In this document: positions 9,783 through 55,087 of the stretch, piece after piece
Layout: each line of letters opens with the position of its first letter
Numbering within the stretch: position 1 is the stretch's first letter
IMG/VR virus record: IMGVR_UViG_3300023174_002543
Span: 303,105-367,104 of that record
DNA: 64,000 nt
Strand: one strand, 5' to 3'
Notes under the pieces: model-generated
The model's input: only the letters and a program-made list of their open reading frames with translations
The model's database searches: none
What the model was told of the DNA's origin: nothing
Position numbers and translations under genes: made by a program

Positions 9783-11408
9783 TTACCCTACAAGCCAATC
9801 AGTGCCGTTACTGAACACTGGCATATTATTTGATCCGGATCCACCCACTTGTGTTCCAAATGTAGTGGTATTAGCATCAGTAATAAATGCTCTAGTGCCC
9901 GCGCCAGCAATTGATGCAGTAGGTAAAACACTAAATATTGTGGGTATAGTTTTGAATGTAGTACCAACGCTAGTGATATTGGGTTGAGCCGCTGTTGTTA
10001 ATACACCAGTAAAATAATTACTAGTTATAAGATTGCCTAAGTTAGCATTGCCTGCACCTATATTTCCTGTTACAGTTAAACTAGTTAATGTACCGACGCT
10101 AGTAATATTAGGTTGTGCAGCATCTGTTACTGCAGCGGCTGAATCAGCAGTAACTGCACTAGTAGCAACAGTGGCTATTGTAGCAGTTCCGGCAGTTCCG
10201 GCACTAGTTGCATATGTAGCATTAGCAACTACACCAGTAATATTAGTACCTGCTATTGATGTTAATCGACTACCATTACCAATAATATAGTTGCCACTGA
10301 TGTTACCGGTAGCAATTACATTACTCGAATTAATATTAGTTGTAACACTTAAATTACCTAAGGTACCAACACTAGTAATATTGGGCTGTGCGGCTGTAGT
10401 AACCGTTCCGGCTATTGTAGCAGAATCAGCGACATTTGCACTATCAACTTGTCCTACTACATTTGATCCATCAATACTATAAGCAGTTTGAGCCTTAGGA
10501 ATTACTCCAGTGAACCCTGGAATATAATTTGCGTTCATAAATGTTTGAACGTCAAGATTACCATATGTAGCAATTCCACCGGCACCTACATCTGATACCC
10601 ATGTAAGATTACCTAAACCATCTGTACGTAACAATTGATTTGGTGTGCCACCACCAATTTTAATATCAGTAATTGAACCTAACACAACGTCACCTGAAAC
10701 TGTTAATTCAGCTAGTGTACCGACAGTTGTGATATTAGGTTGTGCATTTGCAGTTACAGTAATAGCGGTACTTGCTGCAACAGCAGTTAATAAACTACCA
10801 TTACCACTGAAATAATTACTTGTTGTGAGATTACCTAACGTAGCATTACCCGACGTGATGTTACCGGTTACACTCAAACTTACTAATGTACCTACACTAG
10901 TAATGTTAGGTTGTGCATTTGAATTAACAGCAATATTACCAGTAATATTTGTTGCAACTAAATTACCTGTTAAGGTAAGTGTGCTATTTGTTTTATTAAA
11001 CGTTAGGTTACTTACTCCAGTAGCATCACCTGCGTCATTAAATTGAATTTGTGTATTTGAACCACCGGCTAATCCTATGCCGCCACCTGCGCCCACTACC
11101 CAACCTAAATTTCCATTTCCGTCAGTCTGAAGTATATATCCGTTTGTGCCGCCGGCTATCTTAATGTTGCCTACATCTACGTCAATTACACCAGTAAGCT
11201 GACTAGAATTAATATGGCAGTTTGGGCTATCAGTTAATAACTGAGTAAGTGTAGGTTCTATTCCTACAGGAGGATCCAATACAGGATCGTTACCTATATA
11301 AGCATTTCTAGTGTCGGTAGCAAATCCTAATTCACCGATATCTAACTGAGGTAAATCTGATTCTGCGCCCGTGCGAATTTGTATTTTGGAGATTTGTACT
11401 ATTGCCAT
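9783..11408 (-). CDS. Tail fibre protein with repeated AQPNIT(S/T)VGT units
   Basis: N-terminal QISKIQIRTG..LPQLDIGELGFATD fibre-attachment-type domain; five AQPNITxVGT repeats; LQTDGxGNL motifs. Confidence 0.75.
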   Translation of the reverse strand: MAIVQISKIQIRTGAESDLPQLDIGELGFATDTRNAYIGNDPVLDPPVGIEPTLTQLLTDSPNCHINSSQLTGVIDVDVGNIKIAGGTNGYILQTDGNGNLGWVVGAGGGIGLAGGSNTQIQFNDAGDATGVSNLTFNKTNSTLTLTGNLVATNITGNIAVNSNAQPNITSVGTLVSLSVTGNITSGNATLGNLTTSNYFSGNGSLLTAVAASTAITVTANAQPNITTVGTLAELTVSGDVVLGSITDIKIGGGTPNQLLRTDGLGNLTWVSDVGAGGIATYGNLDVQTFMNANYIPGFTGVIPKAQTAYSIDGSNVVGQVDSANVADSATIAGTVTTAAQPNITSVGTLGNLSVTTNINSSNVIATGNISGNYIIGNGSRLTSIAGTNITGVVANATYATSAGTAGTATIATVATSAVTADSAAAVTDAAQPNITSVGTLTSLTVTGNIGAGNANLGNLITSNYFTGVLTTAAQPNITSVGTTFKTIPTIFSVLPTASIAGAGTRAFITDANTTTFGTQVGGSGSNNMPVFSNGTDWLVG

Positions 11409-11416
11409 AATAGTAT

Positions 11417-12103
11417 TTATACAAATTGCGAGTAGTACTGCTCCAATCTAGTAAACCACATATTTGTATATTTGTCGAATTCAGCACCTTCAATGATGAA
11501 TTCCTGATATACAGCATTAGGGTCGCACATAAAAATCACACCCTTACGTATCTTTGTACCGTGAACTTCATTATGTGCATTAGCATAAGCAGCTAATTGC
11601 ACAAAGTAATCATCGATCCATTCACGTTTCTTGGGTTTATTTGTCTGTTTATGATCCATTATTGCTTCGGATCCATCATGCACTCCGCACAAGTCAGTAG
11701 TACCTGCATATATCTTGGGGTAGTATAATGGAACTTCTGTACCCCAGAATTCATCACAGTTCACTAATCCTTGACTAATAATACTCTGTGCCATGCTATG
11801 ACTTTGAATACTATATGGATTACTGCCAGGGTCTCCTGTTTCGCCGTTCTTAATATAGTTCTCAAGCCACTTGTGCATTCGTGTTCCGCGACCTGCAGCT
11901 TCGGTAGTAATTGCTTGTGCTTGAACAGTGCCCACACGTTTGCGCCAGTTTTGTAATGCTTGCTTGCTTTCTTCACTTTTAGTAGCATCAAGTACTGTAG
12001 TGACACTGGGGAGTTTCTCTCCGTCTGGGGTAAGATATCTACGCTTACCTTCTACTTCAACCCTTTGCATGGGTTGATAGATATATTTGTTTGGATTATA
12101 CAT
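11417..12103 (-). CDS. PD-(D/E)xK exonuclease (RecB/Cas4-like)
   Basis: LPSVTTVL, RGTRMH, YAGTTD..DHKQ, QLAAYA. Confidence 0.85.
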   Translation of the reverse strand: MYNPNKYIYQPMQRVEVEGKRRYLTPDGEKLPSVTTVLDATKSEESKQALQNWRKRVGTVQAQAITTEAAGRGTRMHKWLENYIKNGETGDPGSNPYSIQSHSMAQSIISQGLVNCDEFWGTEVPLYYPKIYAGTTDLCGVHDGSEAIMDHKQTNKPKKREWIDDYFVQLAAYANAHNEVHGTKIRKGVIFMCDPNAVYQEFIIEGAEFDKYTNMWFTRLEQYYSQFV

Positions 12104-12143: not shown

Positions 12144-12467
12144 CTATATTCGGAAACTCTCGCCGCATCCACAACGATCACGTTCATTTGGATTTTTAAA
12201 GTCAAACCCTTCATTTAATCCATTGCGTGTATAATCTATTGTCATGCCGTTAAGATAGACCATATCTTTAGTAGATATCAATATAATAAAGTCAGGGTAT
12301 GTTATACGTTCATCAAATGGATCAAACTTTACTTCTTTAACATACTCTAACACATATGCTAAACCACTACAACCCGTAGTACGTACACCTATACGTACAC
12401 CTCTATTATGTGTTTTCGTTAATAGTTGTTTGATTTTATCAACTGCAATATCAGTTAAGTAAACCAT
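12144..12467 (-). CDS. iscA: Fe-S cluster A-type carrier (IscA/HesB family)
   Basis: TTGCSGLAY and CGCGESF motifs. Confidence 0.92.
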
Positions 12468-12844
12468 GTTTTTCTTTATAGTTGTTTACAGCTGCTTTGA
12501 TAGCATCTTCTGCAAGTATGCTACAATGTATCTTAACTGGAGGTAATGCTAGTTCTTCGGCGATTTCGGAGTTTTTAATTGATCCGGCTTCATCTAGTGT
12601 TTTACCTTTTACCCATTCTGTGACGAGACTCGAACTTGCGATTGCTGATCCACACCCATATGTTTTAAATCGTGCATCTGTTATTACTCCATCTGTTACT
12701 TTAATTTGTAGTTTCATTACATCGCCGTCAGCCGCATGCCGGAGCACCAACCATCCCGGTGCCGACATGCGCTTCATCCTTGGCGAACGATCCTACATTT
12801 CTTGGGTTTTCATAGTGGTCTATTACTTTATCTGAGTAAGCCAT
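12451..12844 (-). CDS. iscU: Fe-S scaffold IscU, interrupted by a 7-nt stop-containing insert (candidate translational bypass; alternatively a pseudogene or assembly error)
   Basis: True start at 12844 (AGGAG RBS): [18 protein letters not shown]...VGAPACG then TGA (12730-12728). The remainder DVMKLQIKV...[10 protein letters not shown]...LPPVKIHC is in another frame from 12723. Confidence 0.9.
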
Positions 12845-13436
12845 TGTGTTCTCCTAATACTTTGTTTACAATATCTTCTGGTTGGAAGCGATCCCATTTC
12901 GTCCTATTTTCTTCCCCCAGAATCCATTGGAGATTACTTCTACCTCCAATGACTTTTGGATTTATACCTAAATCAAACCCCTGCTTAAAAGGAATAATAT
13001 GATCCAATTGATATTGGTTTTTCATTTTCCCAGTGTCCTTAGGTACTAAACCCTCTTTTTTCATAGCATATCTAGACCTATAGGTTTCTCTCCTACATAA
13101 GTTTCTATATGTTATAAATTCATCATTAATTTCTTTTTTGTGGCGCATGTTGTTGATGCGTCCTTCCCAATTTGGATTATTATGTCCGGTCCACTTGAAT
13201 GATTGAATTGGATTAGACAATCCTTTATTCCAACCTCGGCCCTTTTTTAATCCTTCGGTATTCAATTTAGATTTTTGTTCTTCTGTGAATTTGACACCTT
13301 TATTCCAAGGTTCATATTCTCCTCTGTTCAGGGGATTCTTACATTTTTGTGAGCAGAAATCTAAAAATCTAGGTTTGGTTTCAAACTTTTCATTACAGTA
13401 TCTACAATATTTAATTACACCATACTTGTTTTTCAT
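12828..13436 (-). mobile_element. Free-standing HNH homing endonuclease gene with PWNKG (NUMOD-like) repeats
   Basis: CxxC...FCSxxC, PWNKG/GWNKG, NPNWEG, QLDHIIP...SNLQ...EN HNH motif; own TAAATA promoter; 3' end overlaps the iscU RBS and start. Confidence 0.8.
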
Positions 13437-13466
13437 ACAAGTATTTATCACCTAGGCGTACCCGCA

Positions 13467-52641: not shown

Positions 52642-53801
52642 TTACTTTTCTCTTTTAGTTTTTCTAGTTTATCATATAAATTCAAACCAGTCAAGTTTAT
52701 TTTGTAACTTAGTGCAAGTAATACACCAAAATTTGGTTGTACTTGCATAGCCTCACCCGGATGTTCATTCTTTGACATATCATATATAAAATTAAATTTT
52801 TTATTCTTCATTAATTGCTTTGAACATTTCTCTCCACGGTCTTTTGCAAAATCCCAAAAAGGTGTGTTGAACTTAGAACCAGCATAGTAATGTAACATTA
52901 TCATACTTTCAATTTCACGTAGTATTTCTAAATAAGAAGCATTATAATCTCTGTATGAGGTCTTACCTGACCATATGTCAATAGCTCCTCGATTAATAAA
53001 ATCCATTACTACAATAGATGTTGCTTCCATTGGTTCTAGAAAAAATGACGCATTACCGTTATATATTACCCTCTTAGAAAAATTCTCTTTTCTAATATAG
53101 TTTTTGAAAGTAAATGCATTAGTAACTTCACTCGGAATTAGGTCTAACTCTGCAAATACATTTTTAACATCTTCTTTGACTTCTTCTAATGTATTGATAG
53201 TATGGTTATACATGTAACCAATCGAACATCTGTTTCTTAGAGGAATAGCAAATATCCAACCATATGGTCTGGCTATTGCAAGTGTGTTATTAAACTTTAC
53301 ATTGTCCCAATAGCATTGTGTAACGTAAACTGCATTTACTGAAATGTAGTCTGACATATAAAAGTCATCATAGTTGTCAGGTTTACCGGAACAATCCATA
53401 ATAAAATCGGCATCAATGTCACTATGTGTTACATTTTTATCAATGATTTTAATATCATCTTTCAGGGCATCTATAACATAAGTTTGAAACTTACCAGCAT
53501 TAAAATGATATCCTACATTAGGCGGGTAAAAGGGGTGAATGAAATCTTTACCGCCCCAATTACGTTTATCTATTCCATATTTTATAGTACCATCTAGTTT
53601 TTCTAAATGGTCAAATGTGAAATTTAAATTATGCCATAATGCATTAGGAAAAGTATTAGTTGATCCTTCACCTACCGGTTGTGGTTTTATGGCGGAATCA
53701 AAATATAGTTCTACCTCGCAGTCTTTCATCCATCTATTAAAATGAGAGACTGCGAGAACCCCTGCAGTACCTGCACCTATTACTGCAATCTTTTTAGCCA
53801 T
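52638..53801 (-). CDS. Tryptophan-halogenase-like flavin-dependent enzyme
   Basis: IGAGTAG, VGEGS, TIKYG, DCSG, GWIFAIPL, FLEPMEATS. Confidence 0.75.
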   Translation of the reverse strand: MAKKIAVIGAGTAGVLAVSHFNRWMKDCEVELYFDSAIKPQPVGEGSTNTFPNALWHNLNFTFDHLEKLDGTIKYGIDKRNWGGKDFIHPFYPPNVGYHFNAGKFQTYVIDALKDDIKIIDKNVTHSDIDADFIMDCSGKPDNYDDFYMSDYISVNAVYVTQCYWDNVKFNNTLAIARPYGWIFAIPLRNRCSIGYMYNHTINTLEEVKEDVKNVFAELDLIPSEVTNAFTFKNYIRKENFSKRVIYNGNASFFLEPMEATSIVVMDFINRGAIDIWSGKTSYRDYNASYLEILREIESMIMLHYYAGSKFNTPFWDFAKDRGEKCSKQLMKNKKFNFIYDMSKNEHPGEAMQVQPNFGVLLALSYKINLTGLNLYDKLEKLKEKSK

Positions 53802-55087
53802 TAATTTTCATCATACAATGCGAATGTACCGAATGGGGGATTCGGATTCTTGTCACCATGAATGATCCAAGTAGTATCGCAATAGTCAGGGTCACCCCAA
53901 GAGCCACAGGGATATCCATCAGTAAACACAATCAAACGTTTTGGTTCAATAGCATTTTTCTTCAAGTAATCAAAGATACAATCAAAGTCAGTGCCACCGC
54001 CACCTTGTGGTTCGTAGTTTTCAATACTTTCCATGTTCTCGCTAGAGAAGTCTTGTGGGTTATATGTATCAGTATCAAAACAGAATACGTGAACCTTGTA
54101 GCCATCAAATGCATCCATCATGCCTGCAATTTCACCCAAGAATGCTTGTGCTTGTTTATTACTAATACTACCTGACATATCAAGTGATACAACAACATCA
54201 ATCTCTTCACCCGGTGTCATACCGGGCATGATAGCATCACTATGCCAACCTCTACGTGAGGGGCGCATCCAACTAAAGTCTGTGCGAATAGCACTAGTCA
54301 AATTAGTTTGAATCAGTTCACGCCAGGGCATGACTGGATTAGTATGTTGTTGAATCAATCGTTCAACACCTTTGGGCATTGTACCTGCCTCTGCACTTTG
54401 TGCGGCACTGATAATTGCTTGTTTGATTTCTTGACGGGTACGTTCACGTTCTTCAGGTGTCATTGGTTTCGGGCGTTTACCTTTACCTTTTTTGTCACCA
54501 TCACCTTCGCTATCGCCCTCACCCTCACCATCTTCACCATCCATGTGGTCATCAAGCAATTGGTCAATCAATGAATCAATGTTGATTTTTTGAACATTCT
54601 TCATCAAGTCATCATAGATTTCTTCAGCAGGTTTACCATCATACTTAGTTTCGTACAAGCAAGGGACTGTGGTAATGAATTGACCAACATTGTGTCGTTT
54701 CAAATCTGCATTAACTGCATAGTCATCAGCAATATTCCAGATTTGAGGATCACGTTCATTTCTACGACCCATGTGGTCATATACAACGTGCAATACTTCG
54801 TGACCAAACAAGAATTCAATTTCTTTTGGTTTCAACATTTTGATAAAACGACTATTGTAATAGAATGTAATGCCATCAGTTGCAGCAGTAGCGCACCATT
54901 CATCAGCATTAACCAATTTCATTCGTGTAGCAAGATTACCAAAGAATGAATGACGCAACAATAGACCAATACGTGCGCCTACTAATAGTTCACGTGCTTG
55001 TGCATCAATCTTAGGATCCATTGGACCGATTAGATTATCAAATTTACTACTACGTTTCTTTTTAGTTGGGGCAATTACATCACTCAT
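53801..55087 (-). CDS. vWA-domain protein with N-terminal HExxH metallopeptidase-like domain (DUF2201-type)
   Basis: TAATDG, HEVLH, DMSGSIS MIDAS, GGGGTDF, FTDG. Confidence 0.85.
   Translation of the reverse strand: MSDVIAPTKKKRSSKFDNLIGPMDPKIDAQARELLVGARIGLLLRHSFFGNLATRMKLVNADEWCATAATDGITFYYNSRFIKMLKPKEIEFLFGHEVLHVVYDHMGRRNERDPQIWNIADDYAVNADLKRHNVGQFITTVPCLYETKYDGKPAEEIYDDLMKNVQKINIDSLIDQLLDDHMDGEDGEGEGDSEGDGDKKGKGKRPKPMTPEERERTRQEIKQAIISAAQSAEAGTMPKGVERLIQQHTNPVMPWRELIQTNLTSAIRTDFSWMRPSRRGWHSDAIMPGMTPGEEIDVVVSLDMSGSISNKQAQAFLGEIAGMMDAFDGYKVHVFCFDTDTYNPQDFSSENMESIENYEPQGGGGTDFDCIFDYLKKNAIEPKRLIVFTDGYPCGSWGDPDYCDTTWIIHGDKNPNPPFGTFALYDEN

What the first reader, a model, noticed from the sequence alone, without database searches (positions are those of the whole stretch)
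12721..12790. Candidate programmed translational bypass (stop-hop) in the phage iscU gene
Seen in sequence: iscU starts at 12844 with a good RBS and reads [40 protein letters not shown](12733-31)-TGA(12730-28)-C-GGC(12726-24)-GAT GTA ATG... An identical Gly codon flanks the stop. If peptidyl-tRNA-Gly slides 7 nt from GGC to GGC, the product is the canonical APACGDVM and a 128-aa IscU with all three Cys and LPPVK intact. Immediately 5', ending in the take-off codon, is a ~16-bp hairpin CGCATGTCGGCACCGG-gatgg-TTGGTG(ct)CCGGCATGCG (12771-12733). TCGCC (12786-82) can also pair with GGCGA over the landing site, and GTCGGC can alternatively pair with GCTGAC over the stop. The 70-nt patch is 45/70 G+C in an AT-rich genome, and both gene halves look undecayed. 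Established: matched take-off/landing codons, an adjacent stop and upstream stem-loops define T4 gene 60 bypassing. Inference: a compact bypass element gating an Fe-S scaffold, one codon after an Fe-S ligand Cys, possibly regulatory. I know of no description of this in iscU.
Basis: partly seen in the sequence, partly recalled or inferred. Interest (0 to 1): 0.9.

Follow-up and report, generated by a model that had tools for sequence, protein, structure and literature searches.

The report
Short ribosome hop in phage iscU
A phage iron-sulfur scaffold gene (iscU) is broken by a 7-base insert carrying a stop codon, and the same kind of 6-10-base insert recurs in over 100 related phage genes with conserved RNA signals and a neighbouring homing-endonuclease gene, which points to ribosomes hopping over the insert: a second natural family of the rare T4 gene 60 type of translational bypass.

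Summary
iscU (minus strand) reads ..GAPAC-GGC-TGA-C-GGC-GAT.., and a 16-bp hairpin ends in the first GGC.

It is not an error or a dead gene. I found 125 viral contigs (112 unique alleles once metagenome copies are added) interrupted at exactly this codon. Gaps are 6, 7, 8, 9 or 10 nt, nearly always Gly codon, stop, 0-4 nt, Gly codon, Asp codon. Only a Gly-to-Gly hop restores the canonical APACGDVM in every class.

All interrupted alleles carry a covarying hairpin and a Shine-Dalgarno-like motif 3-6 nt 5' of it (mostly 3-4). Intact viral and bacterial iscU lack both. Both gene halves are under purifying selection.

Endonuclease-linked alleles without a gap instead carry substitutions in the same motif and lack the hairpin and SD motif. 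The gap therefore most likely protects the endonuclease's own genome from cleavage, as in T4 mobA/gene 60.

Some relatives have a second site of the same design at LPPVK. No publication was found. There is no experimental proof yet.

The parts
12828..13451 (-). HNH-like free-standing endonuclease ORF (207 aa from GTG; the conserved start is probably the ATG at 13436, MKNKYG..). Its 3' end overlaps the iscU start.
   Evidence: ORF. It is a clean ~610-nt insertion relative to intact locus L004. Homologues occur in 56/82 gap loci and 0/74 intact loci. Invariant Cys4, DH and N..N pattern. Pfam HNH hits are weak, and the top Foldseek hits are HNH domains at non-significant E-values.
12851..12855 (-). 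Ribosome-binding site (AGGAG) of iscU
   Evidence: Read from the sequence, 6 nt 5' of the ATG at 12844.
12728..12844 (-). iscU ORF1: codons 1-38 (MAYS..GAPACG) plus the TGA stop
   Evidence: Pfam NifU_N positions 1-35, E = 8e-11.
12776..12781 (-). Shine-Dalgarno-like motif inside the coding sequence (AAGGAT here; AAGGAG(G) or GAGGAG in relatives), 4 nt 5' of the hairpin base
   Evidence: Present in 82/82 unique interrupted contexts, ending 3-6 nt (mostly 3-4) before the stem. A 5-mer or longer core occurs in 29/30 interrupted contexts, against 0/71 intact viral, 1/78 bacterial and 1/23 HNH-linked ungapped alleles.
12733..12771 (-). RNA hairpin: 10-bp lower stem (12771-12762 with 12742-12733), a 2-nt bulge, a 6-bp upper stem and a 5-nt loop. 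Its last base pair uses G1 of the take-off codon.
   Evidence: Fold. The lower stem is paired 10/10 in 232/232 interrupted loci, against 3-8 of 10 in intact viral and 4-9 in bacterial genes. Covarying pairs. Free energy -25.3 against about -13.5 kcal/mol.
12731..12733 (-). Take-off codon GGC (Gly38)
   Evidence: It is GGN in all relatives.
12724..12730 (-). 7-nt coding gap: stop TGA (12730-12728), spacer C (12727) and landing codon GGC (12726-12724)
   Evidence: Relatives have 6-10-nt gaps of the same design.
12451..12726 (-). iscU ORF2: from the landing Gly codon, GDVMK.. to the stop (Asp39, Cys63, LPPVK, Cys106)
   Evidence: Pfam NifU_N positions 35-124, E = 4e-36. pN 0.159 against pS 0.810 among 112 alleles.
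12144..12467 (-). A-type Fe-S carrier gene (iscA/HesB-like) overlapping the iscU stop; part of the same auxiliary Fe-S module
   Evidence: Pfam Fe-S_biosyn, E = 9e-19. Conserved next to iscU in both gap and intact loci.

Best explanation
The 7 nt TGA-C-GGC in the window's iscU are a coding gap that ribosomes skip.

Proposed mechanism (inferred):
1. With Gly38 (GGC) in the P site and a stop codon in the A site, the ribosome pauses.
2. The 3' arm of a strong hairpin is still inside the mRNA channel, while its 5' arm and an SD-like motif are already outside.
3. Zipping of the 10-bp lower stem at the exit side, perhaps anchored by SD/anti-SD pairing, pulls the mRNA forward by a few nucleotides.
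4. Peptidyl-tRNA-Gly lets go and re-pairs through its two G:C pairs with the next GGN.
5. Decoding resumes at Asp39, giving canonical full-length IscU.

The gap exists because of a mobile element. A free-standing HNH-like homing endonuclease gene sits directly upstream of iscU, and its target most likely lies in the highly conserved DNA encoding [14 protein letters not shown]. The insert breaks that site and so protects the element's own genome, while the hop keeps the protein unchanged. This is the logic of T4 mobA plus the gene 60 bypass.

Shown: the anatomy, its recurrence, covariation, selection, and the linkage with the endonuclease gene.
Inferred: the hop itself, its efficiency, the pulling mechanism, the endonuclease activity and its target.
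For: (1) Recurrence. 5 of the 80 closest viral iscU loci (the window's own contig among them) are broken at this codon. Pattern scans then found 57 contigs with a 7-nt gap and 35 with an 8-nt gap, without requiring the hairpin. A scan that left the landing and Asp codons free added 6-, 9- and 10-nt gaps. In total there are 125 viral contigs: 120 have a stop right after the take-off codon, 124 have a GGN landing codon and 125 have GAY next. All three stops and all three frame offsets occur, so only a hop gives APACGDVM in every class.

(2) RNA signals. The lower stem is 100% paired. Pair 21-51 occurs as AU, CG and UA; pair 24-48 as UA, CG, GC, UG and GU; pair 18-54 as GC and AU, with no breaks in 50 sequences. 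Stem free energy is -25.3 +/- 1.7 against about -13.5 kcal/mol in intact genes (p = 2e-22). The SD-like motif is present in 82/82 contexts.

(3) The signals go with the gap, not with the endonuclease. 23 HNH-linked ungapped alleles lack the hairpin (-10.5 kcal/mol), and only 1 of 23 has a 5-mer SD core.

(4) Selection. pN/pS is 0.142/0.598 for ORF1 and 0.159/0.810 for ORF2. The landing Gly and Asp codons vary synonymously.

(5) Endonuclease link. 56/82 against 0/74, Fisher p = 1.5e-22. The gene is a clean insertion, and all three states occur among close relatives: intact, gap plus HNH, and gap only. Remnants and GIY-YIG replacements occupy the same slot. Every HNH-linked ungapped allele has a changed motif (GAPSCGDVL, TGSPACGDVM or GDLM). 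L446-449 keep a resident iscU stump ending at codon ~31.

(6) There were no hits in 185,579 cellular genomes.

(7) A second site with the same SD/hairpin/stop design lies at LPPVK.

(8) Precedent. Pairing of exiting mRNA is proposed to drive forward bypassing in gene 60, and the gene 60 bypass protects against MobA (bioRxiv 10.1101/2022.08.31.505936 and 10.1101/2024.12.09.627546).
Against: - There are no protein, reporter or ribosome-profiling data, so the hop and its efficiency are inferred.
- About a third of unique alleles (26/81) would land with a wobble mismatch, for example GGT to GGA.
- In 15/112 alleles (8-nt GGA-TGA type) an in-frame ATG overlaps the stop, so coupled re-initiation is possible there.
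- Four contigs have a 7-nt gap without a stop (GGT-TGTT-GGA) and one lacks a landing Gly.
- The HNH assignment rests on motifs and weak matches: Pfam below cut-off and Foldseek E = 0.6-5.
- The endonuclease target is inferred, not mapped.
- 26 of 82 gap loci have no endonuclease gene. I read this as loss.
- The window's own SD-like motif (AAGGAT) is weaker than in most relatives.
Confidence: 0.75

Rival explanations
1. Split gene. ORF1 (a 38-aa peptide carrying Cys37) and ORF2 are made as two polypeptides, by termination followed by re-initiation or by independent initiation. The SD-like motif plus hairpin would act as a 'split' ribosome-binding site, like those of T4 genes 38 and 25, and the two pieces would assemble non-covalently.
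For: An SD-like motif 3-6 nt (mostly 3-4) 5' of a hairpin whose base abuts the junction would bring the SD close to the junction. In 15/112 unique alleles (8-nt gap, GGA-TGA) an ATG in the ORF2 frame overlaps the stop as ATGA, at a suitable distance. T4-type endonuclease insertions are known to split genes into working halves.
Against: In 82/112 alleles the only start codon after the hairpin is at or after Val40/Met41, which would drop the conserved Gly-Asp codons. In 12 the only starts lie inside or upstream of the hairpin, and 3 have none at all. Alleles with Leu (CTT, CTA, TTA) at position 41 have no start near the junction. Yet the landing GGN and the GAY codon are kept, with synonymous variation, in 124-125 of 125 contigs in a scan that did not require them. 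A single mechanism should serve gaps of 6-10 nt.
Confidence: 0.1
2. Frameshift or readthrough rather than a hop. This would be a +1 shift (7 and 10 nt), a +2 or -1 shift (8 nt), or stop readthrough (6 and 9 nt), giving IscU variants with one to three extra residues between Gly38 and Asp39.
For: UGA-C after the shift codon and an upstream SD-like element recall the prfB +1 site. TGAC is the commonest stop context (26 of 80 unique contexts).
Against: It needs three or four different mechanisms for one conserved design. The P-site tRNA-Gly cannot re-pair at +1 or +2 (GGC-U to GCU). The residues that would be inserted are unconstrained (D, R, N, E, T, I, L, P ..), and they would sit between two cluster-ligand residues of an otherwise invariant motif. 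No spacer contains a GG dinucleotide, as expected if an earlier landing site must be avoided.
Confidence: 0.06
3. A non-functional allele or an artefact: a recent null mutation, an assembly error or a chimera.
For: A 7-nt insert with a 4-nt direct repeat (CGGC) could arise by replication slippage. Only one assembly represents the window's own contig.
Against: There are 112 unique interrupted alleles from many different metagenome datasets, with divergent sequences. A contig from another dataset (L100) has the same junction, and its HNH protein is 96.6% identical. Purifying selection acts on both halves. ORF2 is complete (80-100 codons) in 187 of the 209 loci where it ends inside the contig. 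Covarying signals are specific to the gap.
Confidence: 0.02
4. The gap is tolerated and used for regulation. Hop efficiency would tune IscU dosage in response to release-factor level, temperature or Fe-S status, independently of any mobile element.
For: Gap alleles persist after the endonuclease gene is lost (26/82). IscU dosage is known to feed back on tRNA thiolation and frameshifting in E. coli/lambda (PMC3296357, abstract seen).
Against: The association with the endonuclease gene is very strong (p = 1.5e-22). Endonuclease-linked alleles without a gap change the same motif by substitution instead, which fits target-site immunity and not dosage control. Most phage iscU genes of the same lineage are uninterrupted (75 of the 80 closest). 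This reading is compatible with the main explanation as a secondary role.
Confidence: 0.07

Closest known systems
Phage T4 gene 60 50-nt translational bypass with the mobA homing-endonuclease cassette (Bonocora et al. 2011, as cited in Manning & Atkins, bioRxiv 10.1101/2022.08.31.505936)
   Same: Gly (GGN) take-off and landing codons. A stop codon directly after take-off. An upstream stem-loop proposed to drive forward movement as it re-forms at the mRNA exit. An SD-like element among the signals. The gap lies in a highly conserved stretch of a gene next to a free-standing HNH-type endonuclease gene, about 115 nt from its insertion point. The bypass is retained after the endonuclease decays or is replaced by a GIY-YIG type.
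   Different: The gap is 6-10 nt, not ~50. No take-off stem-loop can form in the A site. The hairpin lies wholly 5' and ends in the take-off codon. The SD-like motif is 5' of the hairpin, not inside the gap. There is no forward-slippage barrier. The gene is different (iscU, not topoisomerase) and is not split by the endonuclease insertion. There is no sequence homology to the gene 60 element. The landing codon often differs in its third base.
Low-efficiency tRNA 'hopping' over a stop or slow codon in E. coli test constructs (Weiss et al. 1987; O'Connor et al. 1989; cited)
   Same: A short hop of a few nucleotides from a codon to a matching codon across a stop, independent of frame.
   Different: Those cases are synthetic or adventitious, with low efficiency and no dedicated stimulators. 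Here the hop sits in a natural, conserved gene with covarying stimulatory signals, and some alleles require two such hops.
prfB (RF2) programmed +1 frameshift (from my own knowledge)
   Same: An in-frame UGA-C stop in the A site plus an SD-like sequence a few nucleotides upstream. With the hairpin folded, the SD-like motif here would be only 3-6 nt (mostly 3-4) from the take-off codon, as in prfB.
   Different: prfB shifts by one nucleotide with overlapping re-pairing (CUU to UUU) and has no hairpin. Here the move is 6-10 nt to a non-overlapping codon.
Mitochondrial 'byps' of Magnusiomyces capitatus (cited)
   Same: Mobile short inserts in essential conserved genes, removed at translation by bypassing. 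Take-off and landing need not match perfectly.
   Different: Byps are 27-55 nt, occur in a mitochondrial translation system, are followed by an unassigned sense codon rather than a stop, and have no endonuclease linkage.
Phage-encoded IscU and A-type carrier auxiliary genes (Nishimura et al. 2017, PMC5332604)
   Same: iscU plus an A-type carrier gene carried by large tailed phages, clustering with proteobacterial homologues.
   Different: No interruption, recoding or endonuclease linkage is described there.

Membership tests
IscU / NifU_N Fe-S scaffold | Match to Pfam NifU_N above the gathering score | tested here: met
   Piece 1 scores 42.6 bits (profile 1-35) and piece 2 scores 124.6 bits (profile 35-124), against a cut-off of 22.
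IscU / NifU_N Fe-S scaffold | Ligand and partner motifs: Cys37, Asp39, Cys63, His105-Cys106, LPPVK | tested here: met
   Cys37 is in ORF1. GD....YGCGS.., LPPVKIHC are in ORF2. All lie in one chain only if the gap is hopped.
Programmed translational bypassing (general) | Two ORFs that encode one protein, separated by a non-coding gap with non-overlapping take-off and landing codons for the same tRNA | tested here: met
   GGN .. GGN flank gaps of 6-10 nt in 124/125 viral contigs. The two pieces abut on the same Pfam column.
Programmed translational bypassing (general) | A single polypeptide spanning the junction is actually made | not testable with these tools
   Needs mass spectrometry or a reporter. 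Purifying selection on ORF2 and on the Gly-Asp codons is indirect support.
T4 gene 60 / MobA bypass element | Slow-to-decode (stop or hungry) codon right after take-off | tested here: met
   A stop follows in 120/125 contigs.
T4 gene 60 / MobA bypass element | Take-off stem-loop with the take-off codon in its 5' side, forming in the A site | tested here: not met
   The gap is only 6-10 nt, there is no conserved structure 3' of take-off, and the take-off codon sits at the 3' end of the hairpin.
T4 gene 60 / MobA bypass element | 5' stem-loop that re-forms behind the ribosome | tested here: met
   Covarying 16-bp hairpin directly 5' of take-off. Its role is inferred.
T4 gene 60 / MobA bypass element | SD-like sequence inside the gap, about 6 nt 5' of the landing codon | tested here: not met
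   Spacers are 0-4 nt and not SD-like. The SD-like motif lies 5' of the hairpin.
T4 gene 60 / MobA bypass element | Nascent-peptide signal acting in the exit tunnel | not tested
   The 38 N-terminal residues are ordinary IscU sequence. No specific test was made.
T4 gene 60 / MobA bypass element | About 50-nt gap in the topoisomerase large-subunit gene; homology to the MobA cassette | tested here: not met
   Different gene and a 6-10-nt gap. The published homologues are all in topoisomerase genes. So this works like that element but is not a member.
Free-standing homing endonuclease cassette | Presence/absence polymorphism of the endonuclease gene at a fixed intergenic site among related genomes | tested here: met
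   A clean ~610-625-nt insertion between the upstream gene and the iscU ATG. Full, remnant and absent states all occur.
Free-standing homing endonuclease cassette | Recognisable nuclease domain (HNH beta-beta-alpha-metal motif) | tested here: inconclusive
   Invariant DH, N, N and a Cys4 cluster. Pfam HNH or HNH_4 at E = 0.01-0.07, below cut-off. The top Foldseek hits are Cas9 and pyocin HNH domains but at E = 0.6-5, and the model's pLDDT is 72.9. A relative (L157) carries NUMOD3.
Free-standing homing endonuclease cassette | The target site in the endonuclease-bearing genome is altered (self-immunity) | tested here: met
   Of 80 HNH loci, 51 have the gap and 23 have motif substitutions. None keeps the canonical VGAPACGDVM, whereas all 75 HNH-less loci do.
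Free-standing homing endonuclease cassette | Site-specific cleavage of endonuclease-less alleles, and homing in mixed infection | not testable with these tools
   Indirect only: the N-piece tree shows 1 state change and the C-piece tree 30; N-pieces are unusually homogeneous among gap alleles; a resident iscU stump ends at codon ~31 in L446-449.

The most novel reading that the evidence does not exclude
Phage homing endonucleases use a portable 'short-hop module' made of three parts: an SD-like motif, an exit-side hairpin that ends in the take-off codon, and a stop codon followed by 0-4 nt. With it they can plant a few extra bases in the most conserved part of a neighbouring essential gene. 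This destroys their own cleavage site while ribosomes skip the insert efficiently and make an unchanged protein. The module arose at least twice in iscU: at Gly38 with an HNH gene upstream, and at LPPVK with a Vsr/DUF559-like gene downstream. It is probably present next to other free-standing endonuclease genes, where current gene callers would annotate the gene as a pseudogene.
Probability: 0.55. Interest if true: 0.92.

Novelty: new variant of a known kind. Interest (0 to 1): 0.9.

Why it matters
Efficient programmed bypassing in bacteria and phages has rested on a single case, T4 gene 60 and its homologues. All of those lie in one gene, and the latest survey describes the cassette as still unique.

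A second, unrelated family would bring several gains:
- It has over 100 natural alleles, five gap lengths, all three stops, matched and mismatched landing codons, and covariation-defined signals.
- It provides a minimal system for asking what is really needed for a ribosome to let go and re-pair. The element is under 60 nt, with no take-off stem-loop and no long gap.
- It would test the idea that folding of exiting mRNA pulls the message forward.
- It would show that 'bypass as endonuclease immunity' is a general evolutionary strategy rather than a one-off.
- It warns annotators that short stop-containing inserts next to homing-endonuclease genes are not necessarily pseudogenes.

For phage ecology, it means these auxiliary iscU genes are probably functional.

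Tried and rejected
- Megablast of the locus against sequenced phages found no near relative. A tblastn search found only distant intact iscU genes, and one 'phage' record that is really an Acinetobacter isc operon.
- tRNA search of the window found none, so a phage tRNA-Gly cannot be invoked from this window.
- Rfam has no family at the locus.
- I looked for a dependence of hairpin strength or SD spacing on gap length and found none.
- The profile search of the HNH alignment against PDB sequences was not significant, and the structure search was only suggestive.
- Pseudogene or artefact was rejected on recurrence and selection. A suppressor tRNA or stop reassignment was rejected because all three stops and three frames occur. 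Transcriptional slippage was rejected because there is no homopolymer run.
- The tree contrast between N and C pieces is only suggestive. The pieces are short, synonymous sites are saturated, and the hairpin columns themselves group the gap alleles. The test restricted to the first 20 codons gave a modest effect.
All searches used the pieces apart.
Full report
**1. What is in the window**

On the minus strand, iscU starts at 12844 behind an AGGAG. It reads 38 codons to ..GAPAC-GGC, then TGA, one C, then GGC-GAT-GTA-ATG, and stays open in the +1 frame to 12451. Pfam NifU_N matches the first piece to profile positions 1-35 and the second to 35-124, so the two Gly codons occupy the same position of the family profile. 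The 16-bp hairpin at 12771-12733 is in the minimum-free-energy fold; the region folds 3.9 standard deviations better than shuffles. The patch is 45/70 G+C against 36.4% elsewhere.

The window belongs to a 367-kb viral contig with tail sheath, large terminase and DnaB helicase genes. It is a large tailed phage. The nearest cellular IscU proteins are from Burkholderiales.

**2. It is recurrent, with variable gap length**

Five of the 80 viral loci most similar to ORF2 (the window's own contig among them) lose the frame at exactly this codon. Their DNA differs: GGT-TAG-A-GGA, GGT-TAA-C-GGA, and GGA-TGA-CT-GGA, which is 8 nt.

- Pattern scans that fixed only the protein-determined flanks found 57 viral contigs with a 7-nt gap and 35 with an 8-nt gap.
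- A scan that left the gap (1-31 nt), the landing codon and the Asp codon free added gaps of 6, 9 and 10 nt.
- The census is 125 viral contigs: 2, 62, 35, 21 and 5 contigs for gaps of 6, 7, 8, 9 and 10 nt.
- Of these, 120 have a stop directly after the take-off codon, 124 have a GGN landing codon and 125 have GAY next.
- Metagenome contigs add more copies, giving 112 unique alleles.
- There were no hits in one genome each of 185,579 cellular species.

All three stop codons and all three frame offsets occur. No suppressor, readthrough or single type of frameshift can serve every class. Skipping from GGN to the next GGN gives the canonical APACGDVM in all of them.

**3. Conserved RNA signals specific to the gap**

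In an alignment of 50 unique junctions, the 10-bp lower stem is paired in every sequence. Three of its pairs change on both sides:
- CAA, CAC and CAT pair with GCT, GCG and GCA.
- GTC, GTG and GTT pair with CCG, CCC and CCA.
- CCA pairs with TGT.

Several of these changes are at synonymous sites, while others recode the residue before VGTG to Gln or His.

The stem is 10/10 paired in 232/232 interrupted loci, against 3-8 of 10 in intact viral genes and 4-9 in bacterial genes. The 48 nt ending in the take-off codon fold at -25.3 +/- 1.7 kcal/mol, against about -13.5 in intact viral genes.

A Shine-Dalgarno-like motif, AAGGAG(G) or GAGGAG (AAGGAT in the window), ends 3-6 nt (mostly 3-4) 5' of the stem in 82/82 unique contexts. 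It is essentially absent from intact viral, bacterial and endonuclease-linked ungapped alleles.

**4. The gene is alive**

Among the 112 unique interrupted alleles, pN/pS is 0.142/0.598 for ORF1 and 0.159/0.810 for ORF2. ORF2 has normal length in 187 of the 209 loci where it ends inside the contig, and the exceptions are informative (see section 7).

The landing Gly and Asp codons vary synonymously, so they are translated. A start codon that would include them in a separately initiated ORF2 exists in only 15/112 alleles (the 8-nt GGA-TGA type, where ATG overlaps TGA). In 82 alleles the only start lies at or after Val40/Met41. In 12 the only starts are buried in or upstream of the hairpin, and 3 have none. 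A split gene is therefore possible for a minority but not as the general solution.

**5. Why the gap is there: a homing-endonuclease cassette**

The ORF directly upstream of iscU (12828-13451) has homologues in 56 of 82 gap loci with enough flank: 47 full-length and 9 remnants. It has none in 74 intact loci that share the same flanking genes (Fisher p = 1.5e-22).

- It is a clean insertion of about 610-625 nt between the upstream gene and the iscU ATG (window against L004; L186 against L056).
- L304 has the 9-nt gap but no endonuclease gene, and is otherwise collinear with the intact L056.
- The protein has an invariant Cys4 cluster and a DH..N..N pattern. Its matches to HNH models and folds are weak. 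A divergent relative carries NUMOD3, and one locus has a GIY-YIG/NUMOD3 gene in the same slot.

Searching outward from the endonuclease gave 51 of 80 loci with the gap and 23 without. All 23 ungapped alleles have a changed motif: LVGAPSCGDVL, LTGSPACGDVM, LVGAPACGDLM or LTGAPACGDVM. All 75 endonuclease-less genes read VGAPACGDVM. These 23 alleles lack the hairpin (mean -10.5 kcal/mol), and only 1 of 23 has a 5-mer SD core. The hairpin and SD motif therefore belong to the gap, not to the endonuclease.

L446-449 retain a stump of a resident iscU that ends at codon ~31, upstream of the endonuclease gene. This suggests a break about 20 nt 5' of the gap.

The picture matches T4 mobA and gene 60, where the bypass insert protects the element's own genome from nicking and outlives the endonuclease.

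**6. Proposed mechanism (inferred)**

When GGN is in the P site and a stop is in the A site, the last ~12 nt of the hairpin's 3' arm are inside the mRNA channel. The upper stem, the 5' arm and the SD-like motif are outside. Zipping of the 10-bp lower stem can proceed only if the mRNA moves forward through the ribosome. SD/anti-SD pairing 3-6 nt from the stem base could hold the 5' arm at the exit; once folded, the geometry resembles the strained 3-nt SD spacing of prfB.

Peptidyl-tRNA-Gly then re-pairs with the next GGN. GGN codons give two G:C pairs, which may explain why Gly is used, as in gene 60, and why third-base mismatches are tolerated (26 of 81 unique alleles).

The absence of GG in spacers fits avoidance of premature landing. 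Pairing of exiting mRNA as the driver of forward bypassing has been proposed for gene 60.

**7. Seen on the way**

Some alleles have a second interruption inside LPPVK..CTC-CCN-CCN | TAA or TAG, CTN | GTN-AAR.. (6 nt), or TGA-CG (5 nt). It is again preceded by GAGGAG, 3 nt, and a strong hairpin (GGGGAGA/TCTCCCC, -21 to -27 kcal/mol, against -9.0 +/- 3.6 in canonical genes). The hairpin's 3' arm abuts the take-off Pro codon.

This second site occurs with or without the Gly38 gap. It usually has a 253-aa ORF with a weak Vsr-like DUF559 match inserted between iscU and iscA. Its landing triplet is only near-cognate. Four alleles also carry an intein at Cys63. This small gene is a hot spot for mobile elements.

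**8. Comparison and novelty**

Full-text searches found no paper linking iscU or NifU to bypassing or recoding. The 2022 survey of gene 60 homologues found them only in topoisomerase genes.

The iscU element works like gene 60 but fails several of its defining features. It has no take-off stem-loop and no SD inside the gap. Its gap is 6-10 nt rather than ~50, it lies in a different gene, and it shows no homology to the gene 60 element. I file it as a new variant of programmed bypassing linked to a homing endonuclease.

**9. Caveats**

- Everything about translation is inferred from sequence.
- The endonuclease's activity and target are not shown.
- Part of the census used a pattern that required the 5' arm of the hairpin, although the 92 loci found without that requirement all carry it.
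- The subscription literature could not be searched.

Noticed in passing
L098:742-770, L099:3464-3492, L475:1661-1689, L478:1465-1492 and 12 more loci (not in the window, which has the canonical CCT CCA GTT AAG): A second bypass-like site in iscU at the LPPVK motif. A Pro codon is followed by a stop and then CTN (6-nt gap) or CG (5-nt gap) before GTN AAR. It is preceded by GAGGAG, 3 nt and a strong hairpin. It occurs independently of the Gly38 gap, and the landing triplet is only near-cognate.
   Followed up: partly
L475:1769-2527 (and L476, L478, L482, L483, L098): A 253-aa ORF inserted between iscU and iscA in most loci with the LPPVK gap. It has a weak Pfam DUF559 (Vsr-like endonuclease) match at 19.9 bits against a cut-off of 20.6, and is probably a second homing endonuclease.
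   Followed up: partly
L162:2248-3528, L167:6591-7877, L282, L193: An intein-like insertion of about 340 aa at IscU Cys63 (KTYG | C...SHN | CGSAIASS), in alleles that also carry the Gly38 gap. L193 has a different insert sequence at the same site.
   Followed up: no
L446-L449, about 1346-1435 of each locus: A truncated resident iscU 5' fragment (ending ..GIGT, then a stop) lies upstream of the HNH gene, followed by a complete iscU with the GAPSC motif. It looks like the scar of a one-sided homing event near codon 31.
   Followed up: partly
L176, L185, L187, L190; L202: Variant 7-nt gaps without an adjacent stop (GGT TGTT GGA GAT, found in four contigs), and one allele with no landing Gly (GGT TGTTGAC GAT). 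These may be decayed alleles, sequencing errors or a different pausing signal.
   Followed up: no
L242, L250: A one-base difference in GTA AAA (A)TC shifts the frame between LPPVK and IHCS. It could be a homopolymer error or another recoding site.
   Followed up: no
window 53801-55087 (-): A 428-aa ORF that matches phrog_1314 'HNH endonuclease' (E = 9e-110). This is another endonuclease gene in the window; its neighbours were not checked for short gaps.
   Followed up: no
window 9783-11408 (-): A 541-aa ORF with about five copies of a repeat containing AQPNITSVGTL, which looks like a fibre or other repeat-bearing structural protein.
   Followed up: no
window 11417-12103 (-): A 228-aa exonuclease (phrog_298, E = 2e-56) directly downstream of iscA. 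It is conserved next to the Fe-S genes in both gap and intact loci.
   Followed up: partly
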